Of a stretch of 64,000 nucleotides of DNA, positions 1,397 to 23,885 are shown in pieces. The DNA lies in assembly GCA_950097015.1 (NCBI GenBank), contig CATNEN010000001.1, positions 16,554,001-16,618,000 of the forward strand, given 5' to 3'. Both the position numbers and the translations under genes were made by a program. Source of the stretch: Macrostomum hystrix. Its lineage: Eukaryota > Animalia > Platyhelminthes. Within the stretch, counting starts at the first letter, position 1. Each line of letters opens with the position of its first letter. The notes under the pieces were generated by a model that worked only from the letters and a program-made list of their open reading frames with translations, made no database searches and had not been told where the DNA came from.

Positions 1397-4300
1397 TCAA
1401 TTCGGATTGGCTTCGAACTCGCACAGAACCCGCAGGCCGTCGAGACAGCCGCAGGCAGTCAGGGCCTCGCCGAGTTGCCTGACAGTCAGCCGGTGCTTGT
1501 GAATGAAATTTAGCAGACCCTGCATCAGTACGTCTGCTGGATGCGAGTTCGATCGTAGCAGCTGGGCCAGTTCCACCTGGGAGATGCCCAGATTCATCAG
1601 GATGGGAGTGCTCTTGACGACCGCATCGGGAATGCGGCACAGACGGTTCGCCAGCTCTGAGGTGGCAGCAATTTCTGCGTATTTCCAGGTGAGGAGTTGA
1701 ACAGCATCAGGTGGCATCGGATTGACTCTTTGCGTGACTCGAACTGTGGACTGCAAGCTGGACTCGCCACTCGATGAGGAACCCGGAGCTTTGAAGACAG
1801 TCACATTACCAACTGTGGCAATGTTCACCATGAAAACTGGCTTGGGCTGTGGAGGATGGGACAAAACAGTTGACAGCATGCTAAGTATTCATGCTTACTT
1901 CTCATTTAACTTTTTGTGCTAGCTAGCCCTGAGCCTTTGAAAAGCTATCAATTCTGGCTCTGGTTCTTTTGAAGGAAGAACCCGCAGGCCGTCGGGTTAG
2001 TTCTTTAGTTATTTTATAGATATAGAACCACTTTAGTTACTTTAGTTGGGTTAGTTCTAGTACTAGTACTTCCCATCAGAACCACTTCTAGTTCTGGCCC
2101 TTAAACAGAACCACTTCTAGTCATGATCCTTCAACAGAACCACTTCTAGTTCTGGCCCTTAAACAGAACCACTTCTAGTCATGATCCTTCAACAGAACCA
2201 CTTCTAGTTCTGGCCCTTAAACAGAACCACTTCTAGTTCCGGTCCTTCAACAGAACCACTTCTAGTTCTGGCCCTTAAACAGAACCACTTCTAGTCATGA
2301 TCCTTCAACAGAACCACTTCTAGTTCTGGCCCTTAAACAGAACCACTTCTAGTCATGATCCTTCAACAGAACCACTTCTAGTTCTGGCCCTTAAACAGAA
2401 CCACTTCTAGTTCCGGTCCTTCAACAGAACCACTTCTAGTCATGATCCTTCAACAGAACCACATCTAGTTCTGGCCCTTAAACAGAACCACTTCTAGCCA
2501 TGATCCTTCAACAGAACCACTCCAAGTTCTGGTCCTTCAACAGAACCACTTCTAGTTCCGGTCCTTCAACAGAACCACTCCAAGTTCTGGTCCTTCAACA
2601 GAACCACTCCAAGTTCTGGTCCTTCAACAGAACCACTCCAAGTTCTGGTCCTTCAACAGAACCACTTCTAGTTCCGGTCCTTCAACAGAACCACTCCAAG
2701 TCTGGTCCTTCAATAGAACCACTTCTAGTTCCTGTCCTTCAACAGAACCACTTCTAGTTCCTGTCCTTCAACAGAACCACTCCAAGTCTGGTCCTTCAAT
2801 AGAACCACTTCTAGTTCCTGTCCTTCAACAGAACCACTTCTAGTTCCTGTCCTTCAACAGAACCACTTCTAGTTCCTGTCCTTCAAAAGAACCACTTCTA
2901 GTTCCGGTCCTTCAACAGAACCACTCCAAGTCTGGTCCTTCAATAGAACCACTTCTAGTTCCTGTCCTTCAACAGAACCACTTCTAGTTCCTGTCCTTCA
3001 ACAGAACCACTCCAAGTCTGGTCCTTCAATAGAACCACTCCAAGTCTGGTCCTTCAATAGAACCACTTCTAGTTCCGGTCCTTCAACAGAACCACTCCAA
3101 GTCTGGTCCTTCAATAGAACCACTTCTAGTTCCTGTCCTTCAACAGAACCACTTCTAGTTCCTGTCCTTCAACAGAACCACTCCAAGTCTGGTCCTTCAA
3201 TAGAACCACTTCTAGTTCCGGTCCTTCAACAGAACCACTTCTAGTTCCGGTCCTTCAACAGAACCACTCCAAGTCTGGTCCTTCAATAGAACCACTTCTA
3301 GTTCCTGTCCTTCAACAGAACCACTTCTAGTTCCTGTCCTTCAACAGAACCACTTCTAGTTCCTGTCCTTCAACAGAACCACTTCTAGTTCCGGTCCTTC
3401 AACAGAACCACTCCAAGTCTGGTCCTTCAATAGAACCACTTCTAGTTCCTGTCCTTCAACAGAACCACTTCTAGTTCCTGTCCTTCAACAGAACCACTCC
3501 AAGTCTGGTCCTTCAATAGAACCACTTCTAGTTCCTGTCCTTCAACAGAACCACTTCTAGTTCCGGTCCTTCAACAGAACCACTTCTAGTCATGATCCTT
3601 CAACAGAACCACATCTAGTTCCTGTCCTTCAACAGAACCACTTCTAGTTCCTGTCCTTCAACAGAACCACTCCAAGTCTGGTCCTTCAATAGAACCACTT
3701 CTAGTTCCTGTCCTTCAACAGAACCACTTCTAGTTCCTGTCCTTCAACAGAACCACTTCTAGTTCCTGTCCTTCAACAGAACCACTTCTAGTTCCTGTCC
3801 TTCAACAGAACCACTCCAAGTTCTGGTCCTTTAATAGAACCACTTCTAGTTCCTGTCCTTCAACAGAACCACTCCAAGTTCTGGTCCTTTAATAGAACCA
3901 CTTCTAGTTCCTGTCCTTCAACAGAACCACTCCAAGTTCTGGTCCTTTAATAGAACCACTTCTAGTTCCTGTCCTTCAACAGAACCACTCCAAGTTCTGG
4001 TCCTTTAATAGAACCACTTCTAGTTCCGGTCCTTCAACAGAACCACTCCAAGTTCTGGTCCTTTAATAGAACCACTTCTAGTTCTGGTACCTTCAACATA
4101 ACTACGAGCGTATTTATTTTTCTGGTCCTGCAACAGAACCAGTCCAGGATCTTTGAAAAAAAACAATCTTTACCGGATCAGATACTAAGGTCAAATCGTT
4201 TAACGATTGTTAACTGCACGAATTTTAGCTTTTCAGAATTTTAACAACAAAAACTAATAACACTCACATTTGGCTGTACCGACGCTGACATCTGTGAATG

Positions 4301-7300
4301 GGCGGCAGCTGCTTCACTAGCAGTGGCAGAAGCAGCAGCCAAAGAGCTATCAGGGGTTAGGTTTGATGCCGGCTAAAAATTGTTGGTAATAAAATTATTT
4401 ATCTACTGTAAAAATGTCTTTTAATCTGGAACTAGATAAGAAACTTATGAAATTTATGGAATAAATCTAAAAAAAATCAACAGGAGCTCTCACAATGGGC
4501 TGAATCTCAGGCTGCGGCGTTCTGGTTTGAGTAGGACTCGCTGCACTGCGCTCTGAGTCGGCAGTTGGACTTTCCACCTATATAAATTTTGGCGAATAAG
4601 TTGTTTGAGCTAGGAGAGTAGTACAGTCTATATTGTATTTGTAATAACATTTTATTACACCTGCCCCAATCGGTAATTGGCAGATGTGCAGTCGACAGCA
4701 CAGCCGCAGCTATTGCACGGCGCATCTGAAGGCTGCGTACGGCTGTTCAGTACATGGACTGGGGAGACGCCACTCCCACCTTCAGCTACCTCACCTGATG
4801 CTGGTACCCATTTAACCTAGGCTAGCCACTGGGCAGCAACCCATAGACAGATGGTTTCTTGCGCACCTGCATGTTCGCAAGGTCCTCTCGGACCTCCTCG
4901 ATCGGGCCAAGCGACACGGTGCGGGCTTGGTCCTCAGCAGAAGTGATGGTCTCATTGGGTGACAGGTCTCCCAGCTCGTTCAGCACGCGCCTTCGCTCTA
5001 GATCCATTCGACCAACATCGCACAGCTGCCACTGTTGGTTGACCTCGGCGAAAGTGGCCCTCCTTTCAGGGGTCTGGTGGACCATCATCTGTACGACCGC
5101 CTTGGTGGTCTTTTGCAGCTGTTCTAGAGGCTCATCTTTTTCGCCAAGCGAAATCTTTTCGAAGCAGCTATCGTCGAGCAAGCGTTGAAAATCAGTAACA
5201 TGCAGGCCATTCCGGACTCGACTCTTGAACTCCTCGATCCGATCGCCAATCACTTGCCGAATGGACAGCGAGCAGAACGCTTCGACAACGAACACGCCAT
5301 ACAGATACCTGTCGCCAAAGATGTCAGGCTGACGCAGAGGATCATCGTAGGACTCGGGCAGGCGTCTTTCGATACCACGCAGCCGGTCAAAGGAGAGCGT
5401 GTTCTGGGTGGCTATCGAGTCAACGCTTCGCTTTGATAGACCAAAGTCGGCAATCTGAATTATTGATGTGAGGCCTCGAAATCGGTCCAGCATATTTGAG
5501 CATTTTCTACTGCTAGAGGTACATAAACAAAAGTTCAAAAAGCATGCGAAGGACGCGCATAACCTTGGCATTTATCTGGTTATCTATGAGCACATTGTCA
5601 ACGGCCAAGTCCCGGTGCAGAATGCCCCCCTCGAGCCGGTTCTGCAGGAAGTCGAAACCGTCGGACACCTGCAGCATCCAGTTGGCAACCAACCAAGCGC
5701 TGCGTGCCTTGGTCGGAGCAATGATTTTCTAAAAGTGGATGAAGTCAAGGCAACCCCGTTAGGTTGATATAGTTTTATATCTGAGTATCAACCCTGCGTC
5801 TTGAAGTGTGAAACAAAAATACGATGATATCTGGCGCAGAGTCCATCCTCACCATTTTTGACAACCGCTTTGAGAACAATCGGAGACTGCCGTGCTTGCA
5901 GAACTCCATAGCGTAGCCAATCAGCTTCTGGACTTCGTGAAAATAGGCGTACCGAATTTTAACGAAAGAGCTGTGCTGCTCGCTAATGTCGTGCATGTAT
6001 TTGATCTCATTGACCAGGTGCTTCATATGCCTGCAATATTTTTCAAACCAGTCATAAATAATCGAACTAATTAATTCGTATATTAAAAGTGTTCCAATCG
6101 GACTCGATGTACAGGCACAGTGAGAGTGCAAGCGGACACTGTCTGACGATAACAGAGTCAGTGCAGATGTACACAGCTGTGTGCGTGTGTGCTCAGGAGT
6201 CAGTGGAATGGGCAGAATTGCATCCTCGCTGGCTGGGGGGGGTCGGTGGCAGAGCGGTTATCGCGTTTGCCTCTCGCACCACGGTCCCTAAGTTCGATTC
6301 CACGGCGAGGCCACATTCATTTGGGGCGCAGCCGCGGAGAGAAGTCTTTGGGGCTTGTCGTGAAATTTTCGCCCTTGAGGGCCAACCTCCAAGGCACAGT
6401 GGAATATACACTGCCTGATGATGAGAAAGTCAGGGCAGATGTTCCACCTGTGTGAGCGTTTGCCTGCGTACAGTATCTGTGTGCGTGTGTGCTCAGGAGT
6501 CAGCGAAATGGGCAGAATTGCCTCCTCGCTGGTTGCGGGTCTAGTGTCACTAAATGATGTGCCATTGCCCGCAGCCCTCCTGCAATTATTAATTATTATT
6601 ATTATTAATATTATTATTATCCTCGCTGGCTGCGTGCAAGAAGCTAGTAAAAAATGACAGTTAAAAAATGTATTACACTGTCGATGTGCAGCCGACAGCA
6701 CAGCCGCAGCTATTGCGCGGCGCATCTGAAGGCTTTGTACAGTCCTTTAGTCTATGGACTGGGGAGACGCCACACCCAACCCTAATTACCCCAGCGCAAT
6801 GCTAGTAGCAATTTTACAGCTGGATGAACTGAAGTAATGCAAAGCTAAATCGTTCGAGTGGAGTCGGGAATCGAACCCCTGACATTTAAGTCGTGAGTAC
6901 TTAAGCATACTACTCACTAACGAAGTTCAACAAGACAGAAAATCTTCAAAATTTGTTAAAAGCATGAGCGGCTCACCAATCCTTTTTGCCAATTTCCGAC
7001 TCCTCAAGCTTAAATATCTTCAAAGCCAGCGGACGGTTAAACGGATCATTTTTAAGGCTGCAGCGGTGACAAATTGCAAAAGAACCTTTGCCTGTTCAAT
7101 GATTTGATACTTTACATAAGATTTGCATTGCCGCGAGTATTTTTTAAGACAAAGTCACTGAGGCACAGTTTACCGATCAAGTTTTCTTCAGGAAAGTTCA
7201 CTTCGAAATTCCACAACTGAGGGAGGGAACTCCAGTCGAATTCTAAGTCCATCTGAAAATAATTGACATCGAGTTGTCAATTGCCAAGCAACAATAGGCA

Positions 7301-8886
7301 GGTGAGACAACTTTTGACAGAATTAGTTGCAATGTGACCCACCGATTGGTTGCGTAACTTTTTAGCAAGTCCAACAGCAGCTTTTCGCTCGTCTTCCATC
7401 CGGTCAACTCTGCATAGGCGCCACAGCGAGCTGATTTCTGAGAACTCAGGCCTCTGGTCTGGCACCTGATGAGCCATCAGACTCACTACCTGCTTGGTAA
7501 TATCTCGCAGCTGCTCCAGGTAAGCGTCCTGCTTGCCAGCCAGTAGCTCTTCAAAGCACTGCTCTTCCAACAGGCGTTGAAAGTGTTCCAGATGAGCGCC
7601 TGTTCTGACTCGTTCCTTGAAAGTGTCCAAATCGTTGCCAATTCTCTTGCCGATAGACACCAGGGTAAAGGCCTCTAACACCAGCAGGCCGTAGAGATAC
7701 CTATCGCCGTAAATGTCCGCCGGTCTAAGCACATTATCGAAGGTTTCTGGCAAGTGCATTTCGATTCGGCGATGCATTTCAACCTCGGCGGTCTGCTGAG
7801 AAACAGCCAGGTTTGTCGTCTTGGACAGACCAAAGTCGGATATCTGAGAGTTTAGAAAGCGAATACGAGGTCGTTTTTCGATCATGAAAGTAAAAATCCT
7901 TTTCTAGAGTTGATTGAGCAATCAAAAATAACTGAAACTCACCCTGACACGGAGGTTGTCATCGGTGAAAACGCAGTCCATTGAGAGATCTCTGTGCAAA
8001 ACAGTGGTCTTTGTGCGAGTCTGCAGGTAGTCAAACGCGTCGGAAATTTCCAGCATCCACCACGCTGTCAGCCAAGGATAGCGGCCTCGAGTCTGCGTTA
8101 ACGAAAATCGTAATCAAGAATTACTATCGAGGCTAATAGATCAGCACAATTTGATGCTACCAACCATGTTTGCAAGGCGTCGACTAAACTTGCGGAGACT
8201 TCCGTGGCCGCAGTACTCCATAGTGAAGCCGCATAACTTGGTGTCCTGGCTGTACAGATGGAAAACACTTATGAACCATTGTTCACGCTCCTGGCCTAAT
8301 TCGTGCAGCAGTGAGACTTCTTGAACCAGATGTTGAAGTAGCCTGTAATTAACATTTTAGAGTGTCCCTGAGCTCGATTCCGCGGTGAGAAGGCTTGGGG
8401 CATGTCGTGCGATTTAAGCCCGTACAAGGACTAACCCCCAAGGCACAGCGAGTGTACACTGCCTGACGATGAGAAAGTCAGTGTGGATGTACACACCTGC
8501 TTGAGTGTGTCAGTGTTACGGTATCTGTTGCGGGTCTATTGTAACCAAATGAGCTACCCATGCCTTGCTTACAGCCCTGAAAATATTTCATTAAAACATA
8601 TAATAACAGCGATTTCCATACCAAATAGTCACAAAAATCACTAACCATTTTGAGCCTCCTGTGCTTTCAAAATTGAATAACTTCAGGGCCAAAATCTTCT
8701 TAGAGACGTCCTTCTGAATCCAGCAGCGATGGATGCTAGAGAACTGACCCTTGCCTGAAATACCACGGATAATCGTCATACCACTAAAAATTAATATAAA
8801 CTATAAAAGTGATGCTGTTACCTACCCAGGGGGCGATCATCAGGAAAGCAGACGTCAGTGTTGGATATATTTTTTAGCTTAGCCAT
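1397..8886 (-). CDS. Tandem kinase-kinase-death domain protein (RIPK-like), predicted 892 aa, 12 exons
   Basis: Exons 8886-8826, 8754-8646, 8342-8165, 8092-7943, 7843-7343, 7252-7174, 7091-6977, 6030-5853, 5728-5564, 5454-4867, 4372-4268, 1846-1397, all GT-AG and frame-compatible. Kinase 1: LGKGQFS, LALK, HRDLSMDC, DFG, LPE. Kinase 2: IGKGSFA, LALK, HRDLAVDN, DFG, LPE. C-terminal death-domain pattern (LMNLGISQVEL...LMQGLLNF...LTVRQLGEALTACG). Confidence 0.75.
1400..1700 (-). other. Death domain-coding region of the tandem kinase gene
   Basis: Helical motifs resembling the death-domain consensus LGLSxxEI and ATVxxLxxALxxxG; paralogous to 20709-21010. Confidence 0.75.
2078..4090. repeat. Intronic minisatellite, ~29 bp unit (cagaaccacttctagttcctgtccttcaa)
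   Basis: About 2 kb of tandem repeats in the last intron of the tandem kinase gene. Confidence 0.95.
4655..4820 (-). mobile_element. SINE family B, partial copy
   Basis: Matches 9095-9350 and 41090-41325 (gatgtgcagccgacagcacagccgcagctattgc...catggactggggag). Confidence 0.8.
6236..6618 (+). mobile_element. tRNA-derived SINE family A, full-length copy with 14-bp TSD
   Basis: A-box-like tggcagagcggt, B-box-like agttcgattcc, (ATT)n tail, flanked by direct repeat atcctcgctggctg (6222-6235 and 6619-6632). Confidence 0.85.
6680..6910 (-). mobile_element. SINE family B copy
   Basis: B box (gggaatcgaacccc on +) and family B body. Confidence 0.8.
8360..8580 (+). mobile_element. SINE family A, 5'-truncated copy
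   Basis: gtccctgagctcgattccgcgg...actgcctgacgatgagaaagtcag shared with 6236-6618. Confidence 0.8.
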
Positions 8887-9094
8887 GATCCCATGCGTAC
8901 AGGGCTTTAACTTTCTTTCTGAAAAAATGTATAATATTTTATTTAGACAGACAAATCCCCATTTTAAATAAAGTACGAAGCTAAGACTCCTTACTACCCA
9001 GAAGAAATTTTAAATGAAGACATTGTTTAACAAAATCGATGAAAATATCGCAGGAATCTAGGAACCGAAATTGACCAGCAATAAACCTCACCTG

Positions 9095-9350
9095 AATAAT
9101 AATAATAATAACTGATTACACCTGCCCCAATCGGGCCAGATGTGCAGCCGACAGCAAAGCCGCAGCCGACAGTTCAGTCAATGGACTGGGGGGGGCGCCA
9201 GACCCACCTTCAATTACCAATTTAACAGCTGGGTGAACTGAAGCAATACAAAGCTAAGTGTCTTGCTAAAGGACACAAATTTTTCCAGAGGAGTCGGGAA
9301 TCGAACCCCCAACCTTCAAGCCGTAAATCCGACGCTCTAACCACTAGGCT
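9095..9350 (-). mobile_element. tRNA-derived SINE family B, near full-length
   Basis: Minus strand reads tagcctagtggttagagcgtc (A box), ggttcgattccc (B box), core tgtgtcctttagcaagacact...cacccagctg, and a (TTA)n tail. Confidence 0.85.
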
Positions 9351-9794
9351 ACAACCTACAACCTATGTAATTTAAAAAGCAAATAGAAAAAACAGTAAAG
9401 ACGTAAAAATGTAGGAGTATGCAATGCAAATGTATGCAAATAGGTATGGTACCAATACACGTGTATACAGTAAATGTATTGCATTTCTTTCTAGAAAGAA
9501 CAAAAACAGATTTTTGAAATAGTGAAATAAACAAAGAGTGATCTAATGAGGCTAAAAATATCAAAAGAAAGAGAAAAAAACGGCCAGAAGTAATTGAAGC
9601 TGTGAAACAACCAGAAACGGATACTTCAAGTAGTTCAAACCTTTAAAACATTTTCCCTGATAACAATCGAATAAAACTAGATTCACAGAGTGGATCATGT
9701 GGATAAGGTACTATGCATTGCACAAAGCATTAGTACAAAGTATCCCCGAAGTAAAAAACACTGCAGAACATTTAGTATGTAAGTTTAAAAAGCG

Positions 9795-11669
9795 TCAGAA
9801 GTCATGAAGGTAGTCACGCGGGTCGTACTGACAGTCGCCATCGTCCAGCAAGTCCGGTGGATCTCGGGTGAAATCGTTGGTGTCAAGATTAGGAGGTACA
9901 GCGCAGTTGAAGTCGATGTCACGAAAATCCCCAAATGACAAGGCTTCGTCGTGTGAGATGGGCTCGGCACTGCTGCTCCGGATCTCTGAACTGTGCGGGC
10001 CTACAGAGCTTGCTCCGTTGGAACCAGCGGTTCCAGAGTCATAATCTGCACTGACAGTTTGGTCACTGAGTGAGTGCACTACCGACTCCTCCTCATCGTC
10101 AGTGCCCAGCATCTCCAGCACTCGAAATCGCTCATTCTCCATCCGCTTGGTGTCGCACTGTCGCCAGCAGCTGCACAGCTCAGCAAACTCTGCTCGCTTT
10201 TCTGGTACCTGCTGAGCGGTCAGTCGGATAACTTTATTCACTGTCGACTGCAACTTACGCAGCTGCTCGTCCTTAGCACTTGCTTGAATCAAACCGAAGC
10301 ATCTTCGATCCACCAGACGCTCAAAGTGGTCAAAGTGCCGCCCATCGCAGACCATTCTTTTGTACTCTTCGATTTGGTCTCCAATTTCGAAGCGCAGCGA
10401 CAGTCTAGTGAAGGCCTCAACGACGCAAATGCCGTACAGATATCGGTCGACGAACACGTCAGGCTGTCGGAACAGATCTTCATACTTTTCTGGAACTCGT
10501 CGCTCGATCGTGCGCTTAGAGTCTAACTCAAACGTATTTTGTGAAGCTATTGAGTCTGTGATACTTTTTGCTAAGCCGAAATCAGCAATCTGAAAAATCA
10601 GAGCATGAATTAGTTGCCTTAAAGCTTCTTTAATGATTCACTAGCATGAAATGATCAATTAGCAACACCTTGACTAGCAGACTGCTTGTGACTAGAATAT
10701 TATCAACAGCCAGATCAAGATGAAGCAATGCTCCGGATTGTCTTGTTTGCAGATGGTCAAAACCACAGGCCACCTGCAGCATCCACCTGGCCGTAAGAAA
10801 TGGAAATATTTCTGGAGTGCCGGACTGACTTGTCTGCAACGATTCAGACAGACTTTCGTTTCTAGTTTTTATGTAAGATTTTTTTGAAGTCATTAGCAGT
10901 AGAAATAGCACGCAATTTTTACCACTCGTGAAATACCACGGGTATTTCAAATACCCACTGCCTATTTCGCAATAGCTCCCAAACCGAATGACCGATTATC
11001 GTGAAATTCCTCCATCTAAATCTAATTTTCCAACCTTTACAATGAGTTAATGTGGGTATTTGAAATACTCCCCTCTGGTCTTTATACTCTTACTAGTAAA
11101 TAAATATTTTAGAGGATCAGCAAGGACTCACTAGTTTGCACTCTAAGCGTTTAATAAACTGCCTCAGGCTTCCATTGGCGCAGAATTCCATGCCGTAGCC
11201 GCTGAACCTGCCATTGTTGATGTACAACCACAGCACCTTCACGAACTCCTCTCGCTCGCTACCCAGACAATGCATTAGTTGAATTTCACGTTGTAATCGC
11301 TTTGTGATCCTAAGGGTTTCGGCAGTCGAGTATGTACACATTTTTGTTGAGAAACATCATTTGTGACATCAAAAGCTGTACGCCGCTTACCATTCCTTGG
11401 CAACTCCATTCAAAATGTCTTTAGTGTTCGAATGAAGCTCTTTTAAAACATACTTTTTGCTGCTTACATCCGACTTAATGGAGAACAGATGACAGGTTGC
11501 GAAGGCACCTCTGCCTGCCAGTTTAAGAAATGGCAGGTTAATTATCCCTGGAAACAGTTTAAGCGCTACGTACGAGCTAAGAATATAAAGAACACAACGT
11601 ACCTAAAAAACTTTTGTCATGAAGAACAATATCAGTGTCTGTTAGGCAATCTAGCTTGCCGGAACTCAT
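9795..11669 (-). CDS. Single-domain non-RD protein kinase (TKL/RIPK-like) with acidic C-terminal tail
   Basis: Exons 11669-11603, 11514-11391, 11309-11132, 10833-10669, 10589-9795. Motifs LGRGAFA, YVLKE, REI, MEFCANGSL, HLDLAVDNIL, IADFGLAK, VPE, DRYLYG; Asp-rich tail ending HDF*. Confidence 0.88.
10895..11098. mobile_element. Short inverted-repeat element (repeat family C, MITE-like)
   Basis: gggtatttcaaatacccac ... gtgggtatttgaaatac inverted repeat; related segments near 22681-22847, 29943-30055, 37005-37500, 39570-39640 and 58977-59050. Confidence 0.55.
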
Positions 11670-12404
11670 GTTTTCAAAGCTGAAATATTAATGTTATCGA
11701 GCAAGAATAAATTACTTTCGGTTTAGTGAAGACAAAATGAAAATAATATAATGTTGCCTAAAGTAATCTGGTTTGCTGCAACCTTTTTTAATGCTAGTTT
11801 TAGGTTTCTTGTGGCAGTGAAACTTAGTAGTATCGGTTACGAGAAAAAGTATCATAAATTTCTTTATTTGGCACTCATTTACTGAACGAGGGACAATAGA
11901 AAGGTTGTGTTTTGGGCTTAGTTTGAATGAGGTTGCAAAAAATGACCAAAAGAAACAATACAGAAATGCTTTACGAAATTTCCTACAATACATAAAATAT
12001 TGTAACCGCACAGCACGTTTTATTTAGTAGTTAAGAAAACAACTTTTGAATGTCATTGACAAAAATATGACAAAAATATACGCAAAAAAGTATATTAAAG
12101 TAAAAAATCCCCCCCAAAAACATAGATATATTTTATATGTTAAGAGAAAAGACATCAACACATTCTTATAACTAGAAGGGAAACAAACAATTATTAAAAT
12201 CTCATTGTGATAGCGATTATTGTGATTACAGGACATTCTGGTCTTCCACAATGCTATATTAACTAGATAGTCCATGACACAAAATTGTTGCTGCACACAA
12301 CAAAACAAAAGCAAACATAGAAGAAATACTAGGATTAAAAATGCCTGTAAACTTTTTATCTTGTCATAGTTTATAAGCAAACTGGATATTGTCTCCTCAA
12401 AAAT

Positions 12405-15355
12405 CGACGTCATCATGATCATTACCATGCGGGCTCCAGTCGACGTCATCGTCATCAATATCATGCGGGCTCCAGTCGGCGTCATCGTCATCAATACCAT
12501 GCGGGCTCCAGTCGACGTCATCGTCATCAATACCATGCAGGCTACAGCCGACGTCATCGTCATCAATATCATGCGGGCTCCAGTCGGCGTCATCGTCATC
12601 AATACCATGCAGGCTACAGCCGACGTCATCGTCATCAATATCATGCGGGCTCCAGTCGGAGTCATCGTCATCAATACCATGCGGGCTCCAGTCGGCGTCA
12701 TCGTCATCAATACCCTGCGGGCTCCAGTCGGAGTCATCGTCATCAATACCATGCAGGCTACAGCCGACGTCATCGTCATCAATACCATGCGGGCTACAGC
12801 CGACGTCATCGTCATCAATACCATGCGGGCTACAGCCGACGTCATCGTCATCAATACCATGCGGGCTCCAGTCGACGTCATCGTCATCAATACCCTGCGG
12901 GCTACAGCCGACGCCATCGTCATCAATACCATGCGGGCTCCAGTCGACGTCATCGTCATCAATACCCTGCAGGCTCCAGTCGGAGTCATCGTCATCAACA
13001 CCATGCGGGCTCCAGTCGGCGTCATCGTCATCAACACCATGCGGGCTCCAGTCGACGTCATCGTCATCAATACCCTGCGGGCTACAGCCGACGTCATCGT
13101 CATCAATACCATGCGGGCTCCAGTCGACGTCATCGTCATCAACACCATGCGGGCTCCAGTCGACGTCATCATCATCAATACCATGCGGGCTCCAGTCGGA
13201 GTCATCGTCATCAACACCATGCGGGCTCCAGTCGGAGTCATCGTCATCAACACCATGCAGGCTACAGCCGACGTCATCGTCATCAATACCATGCAGGCTA
13301 CAGCCGACGTCATCGTCATCAATACCATGCGGGCTCCAGCGACGTCATCGTCATCAATACCATGCGGGCTCCAGTCGGAGTCATCGTCATCAACACCATG
13401 CAGGCTACAGCCGACGTCATCGTCATCAATACCATGCAGGCTACAGCCGACGTCATCGTCATCAATACCATGCGGGCTCCAGCGACGTCATCGTCATCAA
13501 TACCATGCGGGCTCCAGTCGGAGTCATCGTCATCAACACCATGCGGGCTCCAGTCGGCGTCATCGTCATCAATATCATGCGGGCTCCAGTCGGCGTCATC
13601 GTCATCAATACCCTGCGGGCTCCAGTCGGAGTCATCGTCATCAATACCATGCGGGCTCCAGTCGACGTCATCGTCATCAACACCATGCGGGCTCCAGTCG
13701 GAGTCATCGTCATCAATATCATGCGGGCTCCAGTCGGCGTCATCGTCATCAATACCCTGCGGGCTCCAGCGACGTCATCGTCATCAATACCATGCGGGCT
13801 CCAGTCGGAGTCATCGTCATCAACACCATGCAGGCTACAGCCGACGTCATCGTCATCAATACCATGCGGGCTCCAGCGACGTCATCGTCATCAATACCAT
13901 GCGGGCTCCAGTCGGAGTCATCGTCATCAACACCATGCAGGCTACAGCCGACGTCATCGTCATCAATACCATGCAGGCTACAGCCGACGTCATCGTCATC
14001 AATACCATGCGGGCTCCAGCGACGTCATCGTCATCAATACCATGCGGGCTCCAGTCGGAGTCATCGTCATCAACACCATGCGGGCTCCAGTCGGCGTCAT
14101 CGTCATCAATATCATGCGGGCTCCAGTCGGCGTCATCGTCATCAATACCCTGCGGGCTCCAGTCGGAGTCATCGTCATCAATACCATGCGGGCTCCAGTC
14201 GACGTCATCGTCATCAACACCATGCGGGCTCCAGTCGGAGTCATCGTCATCAATATCATGCGGGCTCCAGTCGGCGTCATCGTCATCAATACCCTGCGGG
14301 CTCCAGTCGGAGTCATCGTCATCAATACCATGCAGGCTACAGCCGACGTCATCGTCATCAATACCATGCGGGCTACAGCCGACGTCATCGTCATCAATAC
14401 CATGCGGGCTACAGCCGACGTCATCGTCATCAATACCATGCGGGCTCCAGTCGACGTCATCGTCATCAATACCCTGCGGGCTACAGCCGACGCCATCGTC
14501 ATCAATACCATGCGGGCTCCAGTCGACGTCATCGTCATCAATACCCTGCAGGCTCCAGTCGGAGTCATCGTCATCAACACCATGCGGGCTCCAGTCGGCG
14601 TCATCGTCATCAACACCATGCGGGCTCCAGTCGACGTCATCGTCATCAATACCCTGCGGGCTACAGCCGACGTCATCGTCATCAATACCATGCGGGCTCC
14701 AGTCGACGTCATCATCATCAATACCATGCGGGCTCTAGGCGACGTCATCGTCATCAATACCCTGCGGGCTCCAGTCGGAGTCATCGTCATCAACACCATG
14801 CGGGCTACAGCCGACGTCATCGTCATCAACACCATGCGGGCTCCAGTCGGAGTCATCGTCATCAACACCATGCAGGCTACAGCCGACGTCATCGTCATCA
14901 ATACCATGCAGGCTACAGCCGACGTCATCGTCATCAATACCATGCGGGCTCCAGCGACGTCATCGTCATCAATACCATGCGGGCTCCAGTCGGAGTCATC
15001 GTCATCAACACCATGCAGGCTACAGCCGACGTCATCGTCATCAATACCATGCAGGCTACAGCCGACGTCATCGTCATCAATACCATGCGGGCTCCAGCGA
15101 CGTCATCGTCATCAATACCATGCGGGCTCCAGTCGGAGTCATCGTCATCAACACCATGCGGGCTCCAGTCGGCGTCATCGTCATCAATACCATGCAGGCT
15201 ACAGCCGACGTCATCGTCATCAATACCATGCGGGCTCCAGTCGGAGTCATCGTCATCAACACCATGCGGGCTCCAGTCGGCGTCATCGTCATCAATACCA
15301 TGCAGGCTACAGCCGACGTCATCGTCATCAATACCATGCGGGCTCCAGTCGACGT
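12405..15355. repeat. 36-bp minisatellite (~3 kb); one minus-strand frame encodes DWSPHGIDDDDV-type acidic repeats
   Basis: Tandem units cgtcatcgtcatcaataccatgcgggctccagtcga, with occasional 35-bp units (ccagcgacg). Confidence 0.95.
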
Positions 15356-15637
15356 TGTTCGACTTTATTGTGAGAATCCGACGAACTCCGAACTCGATCG
15401 ATACGATTTTTTGGACCACGTCCGTTGCATTACGGACACGCTGTAGACCAGAAAGCTGCCCTTGTTTATCTGTGACGCTTTTCGAAGAATAAATCACTTA
15501 GGCATCAACAGGCACATAAGCTTGACCTGACGAAGAATTTATTGAATTTTGAAAACCAGTAGCTTCTTCGCTTGAGCCAGCAGTGTCACGGGAATGATCT
15601 GCGCTAGCACTGACTGTTTGGTCACTGAGTGAGTGCA

Positions 15638-17852
15638 CTACTCCTCCTCATCGTCAGTACCCAGCATCTCCAGCACTCGAGATCGCTCATTCTCCATCCG
15701 CTTGGTGTCGCACTGTCGCCAGCAGCTGCACAACTCAGCAAATTCTGCTCGCTTTTCTGGTACCTGCTGAGCGGTCAGTCCGATAACTTTATTCACAGTC
15801 GACTGCAACTTACGCAGCTGCTCGTCCTTAGCACTTGCTTGAATCAAACCGAAGCATCTTCGATCCACCAGACGCTCAAAGTGGTCAAAGTGCCGTCCAT
15901 CGCAAACCATTCTTTTGTACTCTTCGATTTGGTCTCTAATTTGGAAGCGCAGCGATAGTCTAGTGAAGGCCTCAACGACGCAAATGCCGTACAGATATCG
16001 GTCGACAAACACGTCAGGCTGTCGAAACAGGTCTTCATACTTTTCTGGAACTCGCCGCTCAATCGCGCGCTTAGATTCTAATTGTAGCGAACACGTGGTG
16101 GCGATAGAATCTGCTACGTTTTTTGCTAAACCAAAATCTGCTATCTGCAAAGTTAAAAGAAAAAGCTCTTTTTGCTGCGAAATTCAGGACAAAGGCTAAA
16201 GGGAACACACCTTTACATCAAGTCGCTCAGTAACAAGAATATTATCGAGGGCCAGATCCAAATGCAGCATCCCAGATGCTGAAGTCTGTAAGTAGTCAAA
16301 ACAGTCAGCAACTTGCAACATCCATTTGGCCGTTAGAAAGGCAGGTGGTACTAGCGATGGCACCTATGGAAAGATTTGACTAGTAAGTCCATGCTCACGT
16401 TTGTTTTAAGGATTAAGTTTTATAAAATATCAAGATAGGCAAAGACACTACCTACAGTGCACTCTAAGCGTTTAATAAACAGTCTCAGGCTTCCATTGGC
16501 GCAGAATTCCATGCCGTAGCCGCAGAATCTGCCATTGTTGATGTACAACCACAGCACCTTCACGATTTCGTCTCGCTCGCTACCAAGGCGATGCAGTAGT
16601 TGAATTTCACGCTTCAATCGCTTTACAATCCTAAAACAATAGGTAAATAGTTGCTTAGGACTAAAAGACCTGCTAAGCTTCCTTAACAGTTAATATCCAA
16701 TGTTTCCCGCCCTATCATGGAAGGCTCGTGTACATATTTCATTGCTCTGAGGACCAGGTCGAGCATATTTTAGTTTACTAGCACGAAAAACTAAACGGCA
16801 TTTGTAAACAACAGTTAAAGAGCACTAAGTAAAAAACTCTTCCAGACGTTGGTCCACGACAAGCATCAGACTATTAAGGCTATAGACTTCAGCAACATCA
16901 CATGAGCGATTATAGGTGCTGCACTCTCGCACCTCTGGCACCAAGGTCCCTGAGCTAGATATCGCGGTGACGCAACATTGAAGCACAGCCGTAGAGAGAA
17001 GGCTTGAGGGCTTGTCATGCAATTTAATCCCTTAAGGGCCAACCTCCATGGCACAATGAGAGTGTACACTGCCTGACGATGAGAAAGTCAGGGCAGATGT
17101 ACACAACTGTGTGAGTGTGTGTTCACACTTAAAACTTCAAATTAGCAATTTTCCGCAGAACTCCTGCAATACTTTATTTTTTTCATTAGGGTTGGGCTAT
17201 TACTATTATATCTTATCCTCTAATGCCGTGCGGCTAGTCCCTCACGTTTTTATCTTATGTGGCAGCAACCGCAAGTATCTAGTAGGAATTAGCAAGCATG
17301 AGCGTAGCCAGGCACTGCAACTTGCTGAACTTCCTAACTTCTAAAATCGGCCCTTTTATATTTGTAAATTGACAGCATATGCCAAAATTGCCAACTCCAA
17401 ATGGAACAAAACAAATGGGATTCACATGTCTACACTGTTTGCCCTGCCTTTTGGTTTGAATATTCTAATAAAAAAATCACCTAAATCACTCAAAAATCGA
17501 AACCCAAAATGAGTAACAGTCACGAGTTGGAGTTGAGGTTTCACTAATGACATATTTTACAACATATAAAGTATAACCTCTTGCTTACCATTTAATCTGC
17601 ATGCCATTTATACTGTCTCTCATCTCCGGGTTAAGTTCCTTAAGCACATGCTTAAATTTTGCTTGGTCAGACTTCAATAGGCACAACTTGCAGGTTGCAA
17701 ATGAACCTTTGCCTACAGTTTAAATAAAAGTAAAATAAATGAATATACTACAATGAGACACATTTATTACTCAAATAAGACGTACCAAGAAAACCATCCT
17801 CAAAAATATTGATGTCTTTCTCAGTGACACTAGGTAGCTTGTTAGAACTCAT
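15638..17852 (-). CDS. Single-domain non-RD protein kinase, paralog of 9795-11669, with C-terminal tail truncated
   Basis: Exons 17852-17786, 17712-17589, 16630-16456, 16363-16211, 16144-15638. Motifs LGKGSFA, HVLKE, HLDLALDNIL, IADFGLAK, VPE, DRYLYG. A 4-bp deletion relative to the paralog creates the TAG at 15640-15638. Confidence 0.82.
16905..17120 (+). mobile_element. SINE family A, partial copy
   Basis: caccaaggtccctgagct...ggccaacctcc...actgcctgacgatgagaaagtcagggcagatgtacac. Confidence 0.8.
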
Positions 17853-20705: not shown

Positions 20706-23700
20706 TCAGTTTTCAAACCTACTCAGAAGTCTGAGGCCCGCCAAGCAGCCACAGCGTTTGAATGCCTCAGCCAGGCTATTCGCCGACAAATTCAACGTCA
20801 CACGATGTCTGCTCAGCACTTTCAGCAGCCTGTCAGCGCGGCTAGCTGGTGAGCTTGCTTCCAGCTCGAAGTCAGCGATAGTAGGGCAGCCGAGCTCGCG
20901 TAGAATAAACTTATCGCGCTCGACCACCTCACGGCTGGCGCAAAGACATTTCAGTAGAGCTTCGCATGCGGCAGAGTCTGAGTAGCCTCGGCTGAGCAAC
21001 TGAACTTCATCTCCCTGCACTGGCGGAATAGTCTGATGCACTGACACACGACGAAAGCCGGCGACTTGTGCCGATGGCGGTTGAAGCGAGTACACGTCTC
21101 CCATGATGGACGAAATTCTGACCGTCACTCCGCCGATGCATTTGACGGCTTCATGAAATTGCGGGTTTGAATAGGATTATTTGATATGCATGATTTTCTT
21201 ACTTACCAAACAGAACAAGAAACTTACAGATCCACCGATCGTCTGGCTGATCAGTCACAGTCTCCGGGCGCCGGTCGAGAGCTGACAAGAGGGCTGAAGC
21301 CACCTGGTTATCGCTGTGCTCTGGCAGTGTTCTGTTAGCATCTGGCCGTACTGAAATTCTCGATTCTGAAGGGACTTCTCTGTCTTCGAATGTCATCTGG
21401 TGGAACAATGTCAGTACCTTTTGACGATCGAAACTCTCTAGGCGAAAATGGTGTTGTCTTTGCCAAATATCGCTTATTTCCGACATTGTATGTAGCTTTC
21501 CAGCTGGTTGACTTTCGATCAGCTGTAAAATCTGAGAAACTGTGGATTTCAGCCGAACCAGATCAGCAGATCGAAAATGTTTCCAGATGACCTTCAGAAT
21601 GCGTTCACTGTCATGCAGGATCCGCAATTTTCCTACACAGCTTGCGAACAGACCCACCACCTCAGAATTGTCCGACTGCAGGTGAGCGAAAGCTTCTAAA
21701 ATAATTAACCCATAGTGATATCGGTCGTTAAGCTGGTCCTGAATTCCGAGATAGCTGTTTTGCTTCAGGTCGATGATGCTGCTCTCCTTTGGTCTCTGGT
21801 ACATGATCTGTAGGAAGTAAATTTTGAATGACCTAATGCAAAATTTAAATGGAAATGTGGTACATGCATTTTCCCAAAATCTTTCCAAGAAGACTCAAAC
21901 TGAAGTCTTTTTAATATCAGGTACCACTAGGAATGGAAATACGGAAAACGACGTTTCTTAGAAAACGTTTAGAAGGCTCGCTTTCACGCCGAAAGATTTC
22001 ACTACGGAGTAAGGAAATTCGCACTTTTTTTATAAGTAAGTATAACTTACTTCGCATGTTGCTCCAGTGAATGTTACAAAGCTATATTGGCAAAAGTAAT
22101 TAGTCATAAGGCTAGACTCCATGGAGTAGTTCAAGTCCATGATTCCATGATTATGGACCAGAGAAAGGAGGATTTTGTTGTTTCAGGAGCCTAATTTATT
22201 TTTAATGTCTAATGCACCCTTCTGCTCCTAGTGGTCATTGGTTTTGCGTTTTGTCGCTAGCCCAGCAATTACCTTGGCATTCAGGCGCTCATCAATGAGC
22301 ACACTATCCAGACTGAGGTCTCCAATCCGAGTGCAGCACACGCCAGCGGAATCCTTCAGCGTGTGGAGGTGGCTGAGGGCCTGAGCCACCTGGTCCACCC
22401 AAGCTGCGGTCAGCCAGGGCAGCTCGAAATGATGCGGCTCCTGAAAGACGTGACGCGCATTGTTTCATCGCTCAGAAAGCTAGTAGTCAGTTATGGCAAA
22501 TGAAACAGGACTGTGTCACTGGCTGCATACCTGGTCCGACTAGCTCACGAATAACTCTTCTCCTATCCAGCAAACTATTTATTTATATAGGAAGCCGCAA
22601 TAGAACGAACAGGAAGCTTTCGTTTTATTAAGAACACTTTTGAATTGGGTCAGTCTTTGATATCAATTAGGGTTAGCAGTACTAGTAGAGCGACCACGTG
22701 GGTATTTCAAATAGCCACATTTTTCATTTTCGGTATCAACCAGAATATTCAACCTATCGCCACGAAAATCCTGAACACAGCCTAAAATTTGCCGCCCTAT
22801 CTGATAAGACAACCTCCAGTATCACAAAACATCGGTATCGTCTAGATCAGGGGTCGGCAAACTTATTAGCTAGTGGGCCAAAAAGAGAACCTAAAAGACG
22901 GCAGCGGGCCGCATTGACTGTAGAAAGATGAGATAGGGGAGCGATGAGGCACGGGAGAGACGCGACTGAGGAGAGATGAGACAGCGGAGAGATGAAACAC
23001 GGGAGAGACGCGACTGAGGAGAGATGAGGCATGGGAGAGATGAGACATGGGAGAGACGAGACTGAGGAGAGATGAGACAGCGGAGAGATGAAACACGGGA
23101 GAGACGACATGGGAGAGAGGAGACAGCGGAGAGATGAAACACGGAAGAGACGAGACAGGGAAAAGATGAAACAGGGGAAAGATGAAACAGGGGAAAGATG
23201 AAACAGGGGAAAGATGAAACAGGGGAAAGATGAAACAGGGGAAAGATGAAACAGGGGAAAGACGAGACAGGGAAAAGATGAAACAGGGGAAAGATGAAAC
23301 AGGGGAAAGATGAAACAGGGGAAAGATGAAACAGGGGAGAGATGAAACAGGGGAAAGATGAAACAGGGGAAAGATGAAACAGGATACTGTAGGTGTCAGA
23401 AGGGGCAACGGGCCGGATTTGGGAGCTTCGAGGGCCGCATCTGGCCCGCGGGCCGGAGTTTGCCGACCCCTAGTCGAATTGTTCATTGCAGTTGCGCAAG
23501 TATAAACGATGTACCAGTGTCAGTGTTACTATTGTTAAACCTAATCTTACCAGCACCGTAATGAGCTGGCGAATGGTCCCCAATCGCAGATCGCTGATCA
23601 CCATGCAGACAGTTGGTGTCTGTAGTGAGTCGTGAGCGTGATTGCTCAGCAGTAGACTCAGTAACTTTCTGCCACGGAAGTTGCAACGCATTGCGCCCAG

Positions 23701-23885
23701 TGCGTCGATCGTGTGTGTCAACTGCCTGAATTAAAGCGAAACATATCATGAAGGTTTCTTTTAAAAAAAACACTCACTCAGTGGCTTTTTGAGTGCGAGT
23801 TCACAACGACGCCAAGACTTACAATCTGCCACGGACTTTGAGTAGATTTTTCATAGTCAAAGTTCTTCTGATTGAGTTGATAAAT
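20706..23885 (-). CDS. Pseudokinase-death domain protein, paralog of the kinase cluster; 5' end unresolved
   Basis: Exons ~23720-23551 (LGTIRQLITVL, aligns to GSLRQFIKRL), 22440-22273 (PWLTAAWVDQVAQALSHLH...IGDLSLDSVLIDERLNAK), 21807-21228 (DRYHYGLIILEAF), 21148-20706 (death domain LRELGCPT...LSANSLAEAFKRCGCLAGLRLL). HRD and DFG absent. Confidence 0.72.
22848..23472. mobile_element. hAT (Charlie/Buster-like) non-autonomous element with internal GA-rich tandem repeats
   Basis: TIR caggggtcggcaaac / gtttgccgaccccta; left flank gtctagat fits the NTCTAGAN target preference, right flank degenerate (gtcgaatt). Confidence 0.8.

What the first reader, a model, noticed from the sequence alone, without database searches (positions are those of the whole stretch)
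1397..23885. Four-gene cluster of a divergent RIPK-like kinase family: candidate lineage-specific cell-death/immune signalosome
Seen: five related kinase-like domains lie in four co-oriented genes. The four complete domains share one exon/phase layout (introns in the Gly loop, before alphaC, after GSL, before DFG), and the pseudokinase matches it over its resolved exons. They show a division of labour: a tandem kinase plus death domain, two stand-alone non-RD kinases, and a pseudokinase plus death domain. Established: kinase plus C-terminal death domain is the RIPK1 architecture, and active-kinase/pseudokinase pairs joined by death-fold domains build necrosome- and myddosome-type complexes. 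Inference: these paralogs assemble into one signalling complex, with the death domains as scaffold, the pseudokinase as regulator or decoy, and the non-RD kinases as effectors.
Basis: partly seen in the sequence, partly recalled or inferred. Interest (0 to 1): 0.85.

Follow-up and report, generated by a model that had tools for sequence, protein, structure and literature searches.

The report
Flatworm kinase plus death-domain gene cluster
A Macrostomum-type flatworm carries four neighbouring genes of a kinase family known only from this genus; two of them end in a hidden death domain, giving the domain layout of human RIPK1, but the kinases are not detectably RIPK relatives and no joint complex has been shown.

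Summary
Four minus-strand genes carry five related kinase-like domains with the same intron positions and phases.

- **Gene A** is kinase K1, kinase K2, a linker and a C-terminal domain. One 3.4-kb spliced RNA contig confirms every joint seen.
- **Genes B and C** are DD-less HLD (non-RD) kinases. Both are expressed, and dN/dS between them is 0.28.
- **Gene D** keeps only a C-lobe remnant without DFG, plus the C-terminal domain. I found no N-lobe.

The C-terminal domain of A folds with confidence as a death domain. Its best match is the human RIPK1 DD (Z 12.9), tied with FADD and TRADD. Pfam misses it (E 0.044).

The kinase is an orphan. A profile search of 1.84 billion proteins found relatives only in Macrostomum lignano. 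Solved-structure searches put tyrosine kinases first and no RIPK or IRAK in the top 60.

So the layout resembles RIPK1 but RIPK membership is not shown. The signalosome idea is untested: the DD-DD complex prediction gave no verdict, and expression of D is unknown. A conserved V-S-I-G-type motif sits where RIPK1 has its RHIM; this is a lead only. The scan noted gene A once before, on this same stretch.

The parts
1397..8918 (-). Gene A: 13 coding exons, 920 aa. Layout is K1, K2, Ser/Ala/Pro-rich linker, conserved motif, death domain. ATG at 8886; stop at 1397-1399.
   Evidence: Exon ends have AG/GT and consistent phases. A 3427-nt spliced RNA contig in X4 and a 3418-nt one in X5 carry all joints down to 4372. 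The model is 52% identical end to end to M. lignano P0013.
7343..8886 (-). Gene A kinase domain K1. Exons 8826-8886, 8646-8754, 8165-8342, 7943-8092, 7343-7843. HRD and DFG are present; the catalytic-loop Asn is replaced by Cys (HRDLSMDC).
   Evidence: Joints are seen in RNA. The M. lignano orthologue has Ser at the same place.
4867..7252 (-). Gene A kinase domain K2. Exons 7174-7252, 6977-7091, 5853-6030, 5564-5728, 4867-5454. It has the full catalytic set: GKGSF, ALK, E, HRDLAVDN, DFG.
   Evidence: Joints are seen in RNA. Pfam PK_Tyr_Ser-Thr hits per exon.
4268..4577 (-). Two short linker exons of gene A, 4494-4577 and 4268-4372. Both are phase 0 and low-complexity Ser/Ala/Pro/Thr.
   Evidence: Joints 4867|4577 and 4494|4372 in RNA contigs. 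Frames are open.
1793..1837 (-). Conserved beta-prone motif of gene A (VFMVNIATVGNVTVF), about 30 residues before the death domain.
   Evidence: It is an island of conservation in an otherwise unalignable linker. The equivalents are VSIGTVGGEM (P0013), VSIGRVLGDV (L007), VSIGKVLGNV (P0003) and VRISSIMGDV (gene D). It is disordered in the models. There is no Pfam RHIM hit.
1400..1717 (-). Death domain of gene A (last 106 residues).
   Evidence: AF2 block-mean pLDDT is 86-94. VIA-align gives Z 12.9, rmsd 1.9 A over 92 of 97 residues to the human RIPK1 DD. FADD, TRADD, ankyrin-G and RAIDD DDs score Z 11.9-12.3, and CARDs 8.4 or less. Pfam Death reaches only E 0.044.
9795..11669 (-). Gene B: 5 exons (11603-11669, 11391-11514, 11132-11309, 10669-10833, 9798-10589), 442 aa. 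A stand-alone HLD (non-RD) kinase with an acidic C-terminal tail and no DD.
   Evidence: RNA contigs cover 9551-10299.
15638..17852 (-). Gene C: 5 exons (17786-17852, 17589-17712, 16456-16630, 16211-16363, 15641-16144), 341 aa. An HLD kinase 76% identical to B. A 4-bp deletion relative to B gives an early stop.
   Evidence: An RNA contig carries C's 4-bp deletion and two C-specific bases. dN/dS of B against C is 0.28.
20706..22440 (-). Gene D core. It holds an exon-4-like piece 22273-22440 (degenerate catalytic loop), an exon-5-like piece 21228-21807 (no DFG, short activation segment), and a last exon 20709-21148 with the motif (about 21087-21143) and the death domain (20709-21029).
   Evidence: A family HMM hits the exon-4-like piece at E 2.6e-10. 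Exon 5 aligns with the others at 26% identity. Its DD matches A's DD at BLASTP 1e-16. Expression was not tested.
23551..23885 (-). Candidate upstream exons of gene D. One ends '...GTIRQLITVL|GT' at 23551 and one ends at 23823. They resemble the GSL and beta3 exons by eye only.
   Evidence: They are not significant against the family N-lobe HMM.
2077..4102 (.). 29-bp minisatellite, 70 copies, inside the last intron of gene A.
   Evidence: It blocked read laying across the intron.
12404..15355 (.). 36-bp minisatellite, 82 copies, between genes C and B. It is the source of the long spurious ORFs on both strands.

Best explanation
**What it is.** The window holds a tandem-duplicated cluster of a kinase family found so far only in Macrostomum flatworms. 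The family's ground plan has three parts: a very divergent TK/TKL-type kinase domain, a disordered linker with one conserved beta-prone motif, and a cryptic C-terminal death domain. This plan is seen in gene A, in two unlinked genes of the same genome, and in their M. lignano orthologues.

**How the four genes differ.**
- Gene A has duplicated the kinase internally. K1 has lost the catalytic-loop Asn in both species. K2 keeps every catalytic residue.
- B and C have lost the linker and DD. They keep an intact non-RD (HLD) kinase under purifying selection.
- D has lost the N-lobe and the DFG. It keeps a C-lobe remnant, the motif and the DD.

**Most likely working (inferred).** The DD recruits gene A into death-domain oligomers with DD-bearing receptors or adaptors; the genome has at least 24 canonical DD loci. 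Proximity there activates K2, with K1 as an intramolecular regulator, as in pseudokinase-kinase tandems. D is a kinase-dead DD subunit that co-assembles or competes. B and C work outside DD assemblies.

**Shown and not shown.** Shown: the gene structures, expression of A, B and C, the DD fold, the restricted distribution and the conserved synteny. Inferred: every interaction, catalytic activity, and the pathway (immune, stress or cell death).
For: - **Genes and splicing:**. RNA joints and expression.
- **Orthology and architecture:** gene A is 52% identical end to end to M. lignano P0013, which is K1-K2-motif-DD. P0012 is a read-through model of a B-like plus an A-like gene, so the B-A order is conserved.
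- **Ground plan elsewhere:** L006 has C-lobe, linker and DD in one exon. L007 and P0003 also carry it.
- **DD fold:**; A and D are homologous.
- **Restricted family:** 4 hits among 1.84 billion representatives, and every true relative is from M. lignano. The genome has 7 copies.
- **Constraint:** dN/dS of B against C is 0.28.
- **Possible partners:** 24 canonical Death loci in the genome.
- **Published context:** platyhelminth TNF receptors may carry DDs, and Macrostomum has TNF ligands (PMC7519573). FADD and CRADD were not found in platyhelminths (PMC11463336).
Against: - There is no evidence of any DD-DD or kinase-kinase contact. The complex prediction gave no verdict.
- D's expression is untested, no N-lobe was found, and no D-like protein turned up in M. 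lignano. D may be decaying.
- The DD is invisible to sequence methods: Pfam E 0.044, and no DD in a profile search of PDB sequences.
- The kinase N-lobe could not be modelled.
- No functional or condition-specific expression data exist.
Confidence: 0.6

Rival explanations
1. This is a birth-and-death cluster with no joint function. The four genes are simply tandem duplicates at different stages. A is the working DD-kinase. B and C are neo-functionalised or redundant DD-less kinases that act on their own. D is a truncated copy on its way to becoming a pseudogene. There is no common complex.
For: - D lacks an N-lobe and DFG and has no detectable M. lignano counterpart.
- C carries a 4-bp deletion that truncates its tail.
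- dS in exon 5 of B and C is far lower than in exons 1-4 (0.27 against 0.94). This points to recent conversion or duplication.
- Minisatellites and SINE-like repeats fill the cluster.
- There is no support for DD-DD binding (no evidence either way).
Against: - D keeps three open, correctly phased exons (about 395 codons), an intact-looking DD and the motif.
- B and C are under purifying selection and expressed.
- The B-A adjacency is conserved between species whose orthologues are only 52% identical.
Confidence: 0.3
2. These are true, very divergent RIPK1 homologues. On this reading the family descends from an ancestral bilaterian kinase-RHIM-DD protein, and the V-S-I-G motif is a working RHIM that forms amyloid-type assemblies.
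For: - The domain order is the same: kinase, disordered linker with a short hydrophobic (V/I)xxG-type motif about 30-35 residues before the DD, then a C-terminal DD.
- The best structural match of the DD is the RIPK1 DD.
- The unlinked paralogue has an HKD catalytic loop and B and C have HLD. From memory, human RIPK1 has HKD and RIPK4 has HLD.
- RHIM cores are described as VxxG or IxxG with only the Gly invariant (PMC9387487).
- The motif is the only conserved island in the linker.
Against: - No RIPK appears among the best 60 solved-structure hits, either for P0003 or for the family profile.
- The catalytic loop HRDLAxDN is of the tyrosine-kinase type.
- The RIPK1 DD match is tied with FADD, TRADD and ankyrin DDs, all within one Z unit.
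- Pfam RHIM is not matched, and the spacing after the Gly differs from IQIGxxNxM.
- A published survey found no invertebrate members of the RIPK1-5 clade except in amphioxus, and found RHIM only in vertebrates (PMC9573974).
Confidence: 0.12
3. This is a DD-kinase family working outside immunity and cell death. Death domains also occur in ankyrins, UNC5, p75NTR and NF-kB precursors. The family may serve a Macrostomum-specific process such as regeneration, stem-cell control or reproduction.
For: - The ankyrin-G DD scores as well as RIPK1 and FADD (Z 12.1 against 12.9).
- The kinase resembles tyrosine kinases more than immune TKL kinases.
- Transcripts are found in ordinary, apparently unchallenged transcriptome runs from two studies.
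Against: Nothing direct. Kinase-plus-DD proteins with known function (RIPK1, IRAK, Pelle) are immune or cell-death signalling proteins. Lineage-specific tandem expansion is typical of immune genes (my knowledge).
Confidence: 0.2

Closest known systems
RIPK1 (receptor-interacting serine/threonine kinase 1, vertebrates)
   Same: N-terminal kinase, a long disordered intermediate region with a short hydrophobic motif about 30-35 residues before the DD, and a C-terminal death domain. The modelled DD superposes best on the human RIPK1 DD (Z 12.9, rmsd 1.9 A, 92 of 97 residues). Non-RD catalytic loops occur in the family.
   Different: The kinase domain shows no specific sequence affinity to RIPKs. 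Its catalytic loop is HRDLAxDN, not HKDLKPEN (the latter from memory). There is no Pfam RHIM. Gene A has two kinase domains. The family is known only from Macrostomum.
IRAK / Pelle / plant RLK-Pelle kinases
   Same: Death domain and kinase in one chain. Kinase-dead paralogues (IRAK2, IRAK-M, Tube) co-assemble with active ones through their DDs. Plant RLK/Pelle kinases are among the nearest named non-family hits.
   Different: In IRAK and Pelle the DD is N-terminal; here it is C-terminal. IRAK4 DDs score lower than RIPK1 and FADD DDs (Z 8.7-8.9). IRAK4 is not in the top 60 kinase hits.
JAK-type pseudokinase-kinase tandem
   Same: In gene A, a first domain with a degraded catalytic loop (Asn to Cys, or Ser in M. 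lignano) precedes a fully equipped second domain in one chain. JAK2 JH1 is among the best sequence matches.
   Different: K1 still has Lys, Glu, HRD and DFG. There is no FERM or SH2 domain. The tandem arose by internal duplication within this family (K1 and K2 are 43% identical).
Drosophila IMD (DD adaptor with a cryptic RHIM)
   Same: A protostome protein that combines a RIPK1-like DD with a loosely conserved (V/I)xxG amyloid motif (PMC9387487).
   Different: IMD has no kinase domain. No sequence similarity to it was tested or found here.
M. lignano proteins A0A1I8JDI5 (P0001), PAA BOX15_Mlig005512g2 (P0013), A0A1I8I6A2 (P0003)
   Same: True orthologues and paralogues with the same domains, motif and gene order.
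   Different: They are deposited only as 'protein kinase domain-containing' or 'hypothetical' proteins. No death domain is recognised in them by Pfam, and I found no paper that names them.

Membership tests
Eukaryotic protein kinase superfamily (TK/TKL-like) | Kinase-domain profile match | tested here: met
   Exon pieces hit PF07714 at matching profile positions. Full-length relatives score well: P0003 gives PF07714 E 3.6e-29 and P0001 gives 7.2e-39.
Eukaryotic protein kinase superfamily (TK/TKL-like) | Complete catalytic set (Gly loop, beta3 Lys, alphaC Glu, HxD Asp, catalytic-loop Asn, DFG) | tested here: met
   Met for K2, B and C. Not met for K1, where Asn is Cys, or for D, which has no DFG, a degenerate loop and no N-lobe. 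Activity itself is untested.
RIP kinase family (RIPK1-5) | Kinase domain closest to RIPK kinase domains | tested here: not met
   phmmer of P0003 and hmmsearch of the family profile against all PDB sequences put EGFR, FGFR3, CSF1R, JAK2, CTR1 and BIKE in the best 60, and no RIPK, IRAK or MLKL. The nearest named non-family proteins are plant RLKs, FAK and Mer. Foldseek put RIPK1 first, but on a low-confidence model with flat E-values (0.055 to 0.2), so it does not discriminate. A proper phylogeny with RIPK references could not be run.
RIP kinase family (RIPK1 type) | C-terminal death domain | tested here: met
   for gene A. D is covered by homology.
RIP kinase family (RIPK1/3 type) | RHIM between the kinase and the C-terminus | tested here: inconclusive
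   No Pfam RHIM match at E up to 10. A conserved V-S-I-G-x-V-x-G-(N/D)-V island sits at the equivalent place. It fits the loose (V/I)xxG core quoted in PMC9387487 but not the IQIGxxNxM spacing.
Death domain (DD subfamily of the death-fold superfamily) | Six-helix bundle superposable on solved DDs and ranking above CARD, DED and PYD | tested here: met
   The top 26 VIA-align rows are DDs with Z 8.6-12.9. The first CARD is at Z 8.4. Rmsd is 1.7-2.6 A over 84-95 residues. Foldseek gives probability 0.99-1.00 and TM(target) about 0.70-0.74.
Death domain (Pfam PF00531) | Score above the curated cut-off | tested here: not met
   Gene A scores 14.3 bits against a cut-off of 22.6 (E 0.044). D, P0003 and P0013 give no hit. 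A profile of four family DDs finds no DD among PDB sequences. The protein-language-model neighbours are DD clusters, but at 0.84 this is a lead only.
IRAK/Pelle family | N-terminal DD followed by the kinase | tested here: not met
   The DD is C-terminal in A, D, L006, L007, P0003 and P0013.

The most novel reading that the evidence does not exclude
The family is a protostome counterpart of RIPK1 in mechanism. The conserved V-S-I-G-x-V-x-G-(N/D)-V island before the DD would be a RHIM-type amyloid-forming motif. Gene A (pseudokinase-like K1, active K2, motif, DD) and the kinase-dead gene D (motif, DD) would then co-polymerise through both DD and amyloid contacts. That would be a necrosome- or IMD-like switch in a phylum reported to lack FADD and CRADD.
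Probability: 0.15. Interest if true: 0.8.

Novelty: new variant of a known kind. Interest (0 to 1): 0.55.

Why it matters
Kinase-plus-death-domain proteins (RIPK1, IRAK, Pelle) are hubs of innate immune and cell-death signalling. The RIPK1-5 clade has been reported to lack invertebrate members apart from amphioxus (PMC9573974). Platyhelminths are reported to have lost FADD and CRADD (PMC11463336), while their TNF receptors may carry DDs and Macrostomum has TNF ligands (PMC7519573).

This cluster shows that a free-living flatworm lineage has a RIPK1-like layout on a different kinase scaffold, most simply built independently. The family also includes a kinase-kinase-DD tandem and a kinase-dead DD paralogue. 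That gives a concrete candidate for what sits under DD receptors in these animals, and Macrostomum lignano is a model with RNAi and transgenesis.

It also shows that these death domains are invisible to Pfam, so DD repertoires of flatworms are probably under-counted.

Tried and rejected
- **Read laying across the last intron of gene A (1450-7449).** The single call allowed was then spent on 4300-10299, so the join to the DD exon and gene D's expression were not seen in reads.
- **Complex prediction of A-DD with D-DD.** No verdict (score 0.00). This is evidence neither for nor against binding.
- **Profile of four family DDs against PDB sequences.** No DD came up, only chance hits at E 0.2 or more.
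- **Pfam RHIM on the motif peptides.** Nothing.
- **Full-length AF2 model of P0003.** The N-lobe has pLDDT below 50 and the wrong secondary structure. Its Foldseek list (RIPK1, SOBIR1, MLKL, JAK2, all E 0.05-0.2) was judged not to discriminate.
- **Protein-atlas neighbours of the kinase.** Generic clusters such as PBK/TOPK and PDIK1L; no help.
- **Candidate N-lobe exons of gene D (23551-23885).** They were picked by eye and rejected as unsupported by the family HMM.
- **Long ORFs on both strands at 12.0-15.5 kb.** These are minisatellite artefacts.
- **Literature searches** for the M. lignano gene ids and for flatworm RIPK found nothing specific.
- **Joined models.** Searches used exons by reference, or the M. 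lignano proteins the tools returned. Joined translations were built only inside scripts, for local comparison.
Full report
**What is in the sequence.**

Reading the three frames through each region gave complete models with AG/GT ends and consistent phases.

Gene A runs from the ATG at 8886 to the stop at 1397-1399. It has 13 coding exons and encodes 920 residues. Its parts are:
- kinase domain K1 (7343-8886);
- kinase domain K2 (4867-7252);
- two short low-complexity linker exons (4494-4577 and 4268-4372);
- a last exon (1400-1846).

Gene B (9798-11669, 442 aa) and gene C (15641-17852, 341 aa) each have five exons and encode a kinase domain only. Gene D has an exon-4-like piece (22273-22440), an exon-5-like piece (21228-21807) and a last exon (20709-21148).

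In K1, K2, B and C the introns fall at the same places:
- inside the Gly loop, phase 1;
- before alphaC, phase 2;
- after the GSL motif, phase 0;
- before DFG, phase 0.

D shares the last of these boundaries.

**RNA evidence.**

Seven public runs hold part of the stretch.

In runs X4 and X5 (one study, 2020), a single spliced contig of 3427 or 3418 nt carries every predicted joint of gene A. These include the K1-to-K2 joint 7343|7252 and two joints I had not predicted (4867|4577 and 4494|4372). Runs X1 and X2 from a second study (2024) carry some of the same joints with no mismatches.

About 1245 nt of the contig lie beyond 4867. After the two linker exons, about 1056 nt remain, which is enough for the 447-nt last coding exon plus a 3' UTR. 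All three boundaries are phase 0.

The join to the last exon itself was not seen in reads. It is supported independently: the joined model, built only inside a script, aligns end to end with the M. lignano protein P0013 (residues 1-919 against 7-893, 52% identity).

Gene B's last exon and 3' UTR are covered by contigs. One contig carries a 4-bp deletion and two base differences that are exactly those of gene C. So A, B and C are expressed. D was not tested.

**Catalytic motifs.**

| Domain | Gly loop, beta3 Lys, alphaC Glu | HxD | Catalytic-loop Asn | DFG |
|---|---|---|---|---|
| K1 | present | HRD | Cys (HRDLSMDC); Ser in M. lignano | present |
| K2 | present | HRD (HRDLAVDN) | present | present |
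| B, C | present | HLD (non-RD) | present | present |
| D | no N-lobe found | 'TRIGDLSLDS' | Ser | absent; short activation segment |

A family HMM of the N-lobe finds D's exon-4-like piece at E 2.6e-10. It finds nothing significant in the 3.5 kb upstream. D is therefore a C-lobe remnant rather than a whole pseudokinase domain.

B and C are 76% identical, with dN/dS 0.28. dS is 0.27 in exon 5 and 0.94 in exons 1-4, which suggests conversion or a mosaic duplication.

**The C-terminal domain.**

Pfam gives only a sub-threshold Death hit for gene A (E 0.044) and none for D. The two last exons are homologous (BLASTP 1e-16).

I modelled gene A's last exon with AlphaFold2, using a six-row alignment. 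Residues 50-149 came out as a helical bundle with block-mean pLDDT of 86-94. The first 38 residues are disordered.

Foldseek's list is almost entirely death domains, at probability 0.99-1.00. VIA-align gives:
- human RIPK1 DD: Z 12.9, rmsd 1.9 A, 92 of 97 residues;
- FADD, TRADD, ankyrin-G and RAIDD DDs: Z 11.9-12.3;
- IRAK4 DD: about Z 9;
- CARDs: Z 8.4 or less.

Rows within one Z unit are tied. The result therefore says 'death domain of the DD subfamily', not 'RIPK1 DD'. The tool's own note warns that helical bundles need about Z 13 to be safe on Z alone. Here the argument rests on the uniformity of the hit list and the near-complete coverage.

A profile of four family DDs finds no DD among PDB sequences. 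These domains are cryptic at the sequence level.

**Distribution and ground plan.**

I built a profile of the five exon-5 translations and searched it against 1.84 billion representative proteins. It found four proteins. Three are from Macrostomum lignano and the fourth is a marginal fungal hit.

Word-indexed searches found only further M. lignano models:
- P0013 (894 aa) is the K1-K2-motif-DD orthologue of gene A.
- P0012 is a read-through model that joins a B-like gene to the A-like gene, so the B-A order is conserved.
- P0003 (504 aa) is a single kinase with motif and DD.

In the window's own genome (220 Mb, 42 contigs), the profile hits the five window copies and two other loci. L006 has the C-lobe, linker and DD in a single 407-codon exon. 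L007 is the orthologue of P0003.

So kinase, linker and C-terminal DD is the ancestral layout of the family. B and C are DD-less derivatives, and D is a kinase-truncated derivative. The genome has at least 24 canonical Pfam Death loci elsewhere.

**What kind of kinase.**

Pfam scores PK_Tyr_Ser-Thr above Pkinase. Both P0003 and the family profile were searched against all PDB sequences. They rank EGFR, FGFR3, CSF1R, JAK2, KIT, CTR1, BIKE and PLK4 first, with matches that stop at or just past the DFG. No RIPK, IRAK or MLKL is in the best 60.

The best non-family hit is an MLKL_N-kinase-kinase-ankyrin protein of unknown origin. Its similarity is generic to the TKL group. The HRDLAxDN loop is of the kind seen in tyrosine kinases (my knowledge). 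The C-lobe after DFG is unique to the family.

I could not run a phylogeny with RIPK references, because no such sequences were available through the tools. So RIPK membership is not met on the evidence available. The resemblance to RIPK1 lies in the architecture.

**The motif.**

Between the kinase and the DD the linkers are unalignable, apart from one island 125-138 residues from the C-terminus:
- gene A: VNIATVGNV;
- P0013: VSIGTVGGEM;
- L007: VSIGRVLGDV;
- P0003: VSIGKVLGNV;
- gene D: VRISSIMGDV.

It occupies the position of the RHIM in RIPK1. It also fits the loose (V/I)xxG core described for RHIM and cRHIM motifs (PMC9387487). It does not match Pfam RHIM, and its spacing differs from IQIGxxNxM. 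I treat it as a lead.

**Interpretation.**

The structural and evolutionary reading is well supported: a Macrostomum-restricted DD-kinase family, with a tandem cluster holding one kinase-kinase-DD gene, two DD-less kinases and one kinase-dead DD gene.

The functional reading is inference by analogy with RIPK1 and IRAK. It supposes DD-mediated recruitment, K2 as the active domain, K1 as regulator and D as a decoy or co-subunit. The only direct test available, a DD-DD complex prediction, returned no verdict.

Published context makes the family interesting:
- FADD and CRADD were not found in platyhelminths (PMC11463336).
- Their TNF receptors may carry DDs, and Macrostomum has TNF ligands (PMC7519573).
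- The RIPK1-5 clade is reported to lack invertebrate members except in amphioxus (PMC9573974).

Earlier notes of this scan, which are unchecked AI notes, report other DD-kinase and pseudokinase-caspase fusions in the same genome. They also report this same gene A once before.

**Limits.**

Noticed in passing
window 8826-8941 (minus strand): Only about 95 nt of the 5' end of gene A's RNA contig fit the genome upstream of the first joint, although about 117 nt of contig lie there. A strong pyrimidine tract with an AG acceptor sits at 8919-8920. This would fit spliced-leader trans-splicing, which is known in Macrostomum (my knowledge), and raises the question whether the closely spaced, co-oriented B-A pair is co-transcribed.
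   Followed up: partly
window 4700-4899, 6100-6899, 8300-8499, 9100-9499: Intronic and intergenic repeats, some with tRNA-like ends, have RNA contig depths in the thousands against about 25-37 for the exons of gene A. They show many variant contigs and chimeric joints. This is an abundant, transcribed SINE-like element family.
   Followed up: no
window 1-489, 2077-4102, 12404-15355, 22926-23383: Four minisatellites with periods of 36, 29, 36 and 16 bp and up to 82 copies lie in and between the cluster genes. The one at 12.4-15.4 kb creates ORFs of up to 1040 codons on both strands that are not genes.
   Followed up: yes
window 10081-10084 against 15638-15700: Gene C differs from gene B by a 4-bp deletion just after the shared 'DDEEE'. 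This creates a stop and removes the roughly 100-residue acidic tail that B keeps. Homology continues in the DNA beyond the stop.
   Followed up: yes
window 28603-29907 (+): An intron-less 435-codon ORF with a rhodopsin-family GPCR domain (Pfam 7tm_1, E 3.2e-12).
   Followed up: no
window 25950-27494 (+): A 515-codon open frame next to gene D with a coiled-coil-like N-terminus and only faint Pfam hits (PBC at E 0.0017, NHL at E 0.83). Its function is unknown.
   Followed up: no
M. lignano P0005 / P0014 (relatives, not in the window): A further family member in M. lignano joins the family-type kinase to helical and ankyrin repeats and a second, canonical kinase domain. I looked for no counterpart in this genome beyond the seven profile hits.
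   Followed up: partly
P0017 (unknown organism): The best non-family match is a 1427-aa protein with an MLKL N-terminal domain, two TKL kinase domains and ankyrin repeats. It is an unusual cell-death-type architecture in its own right.
   Followed up: partly
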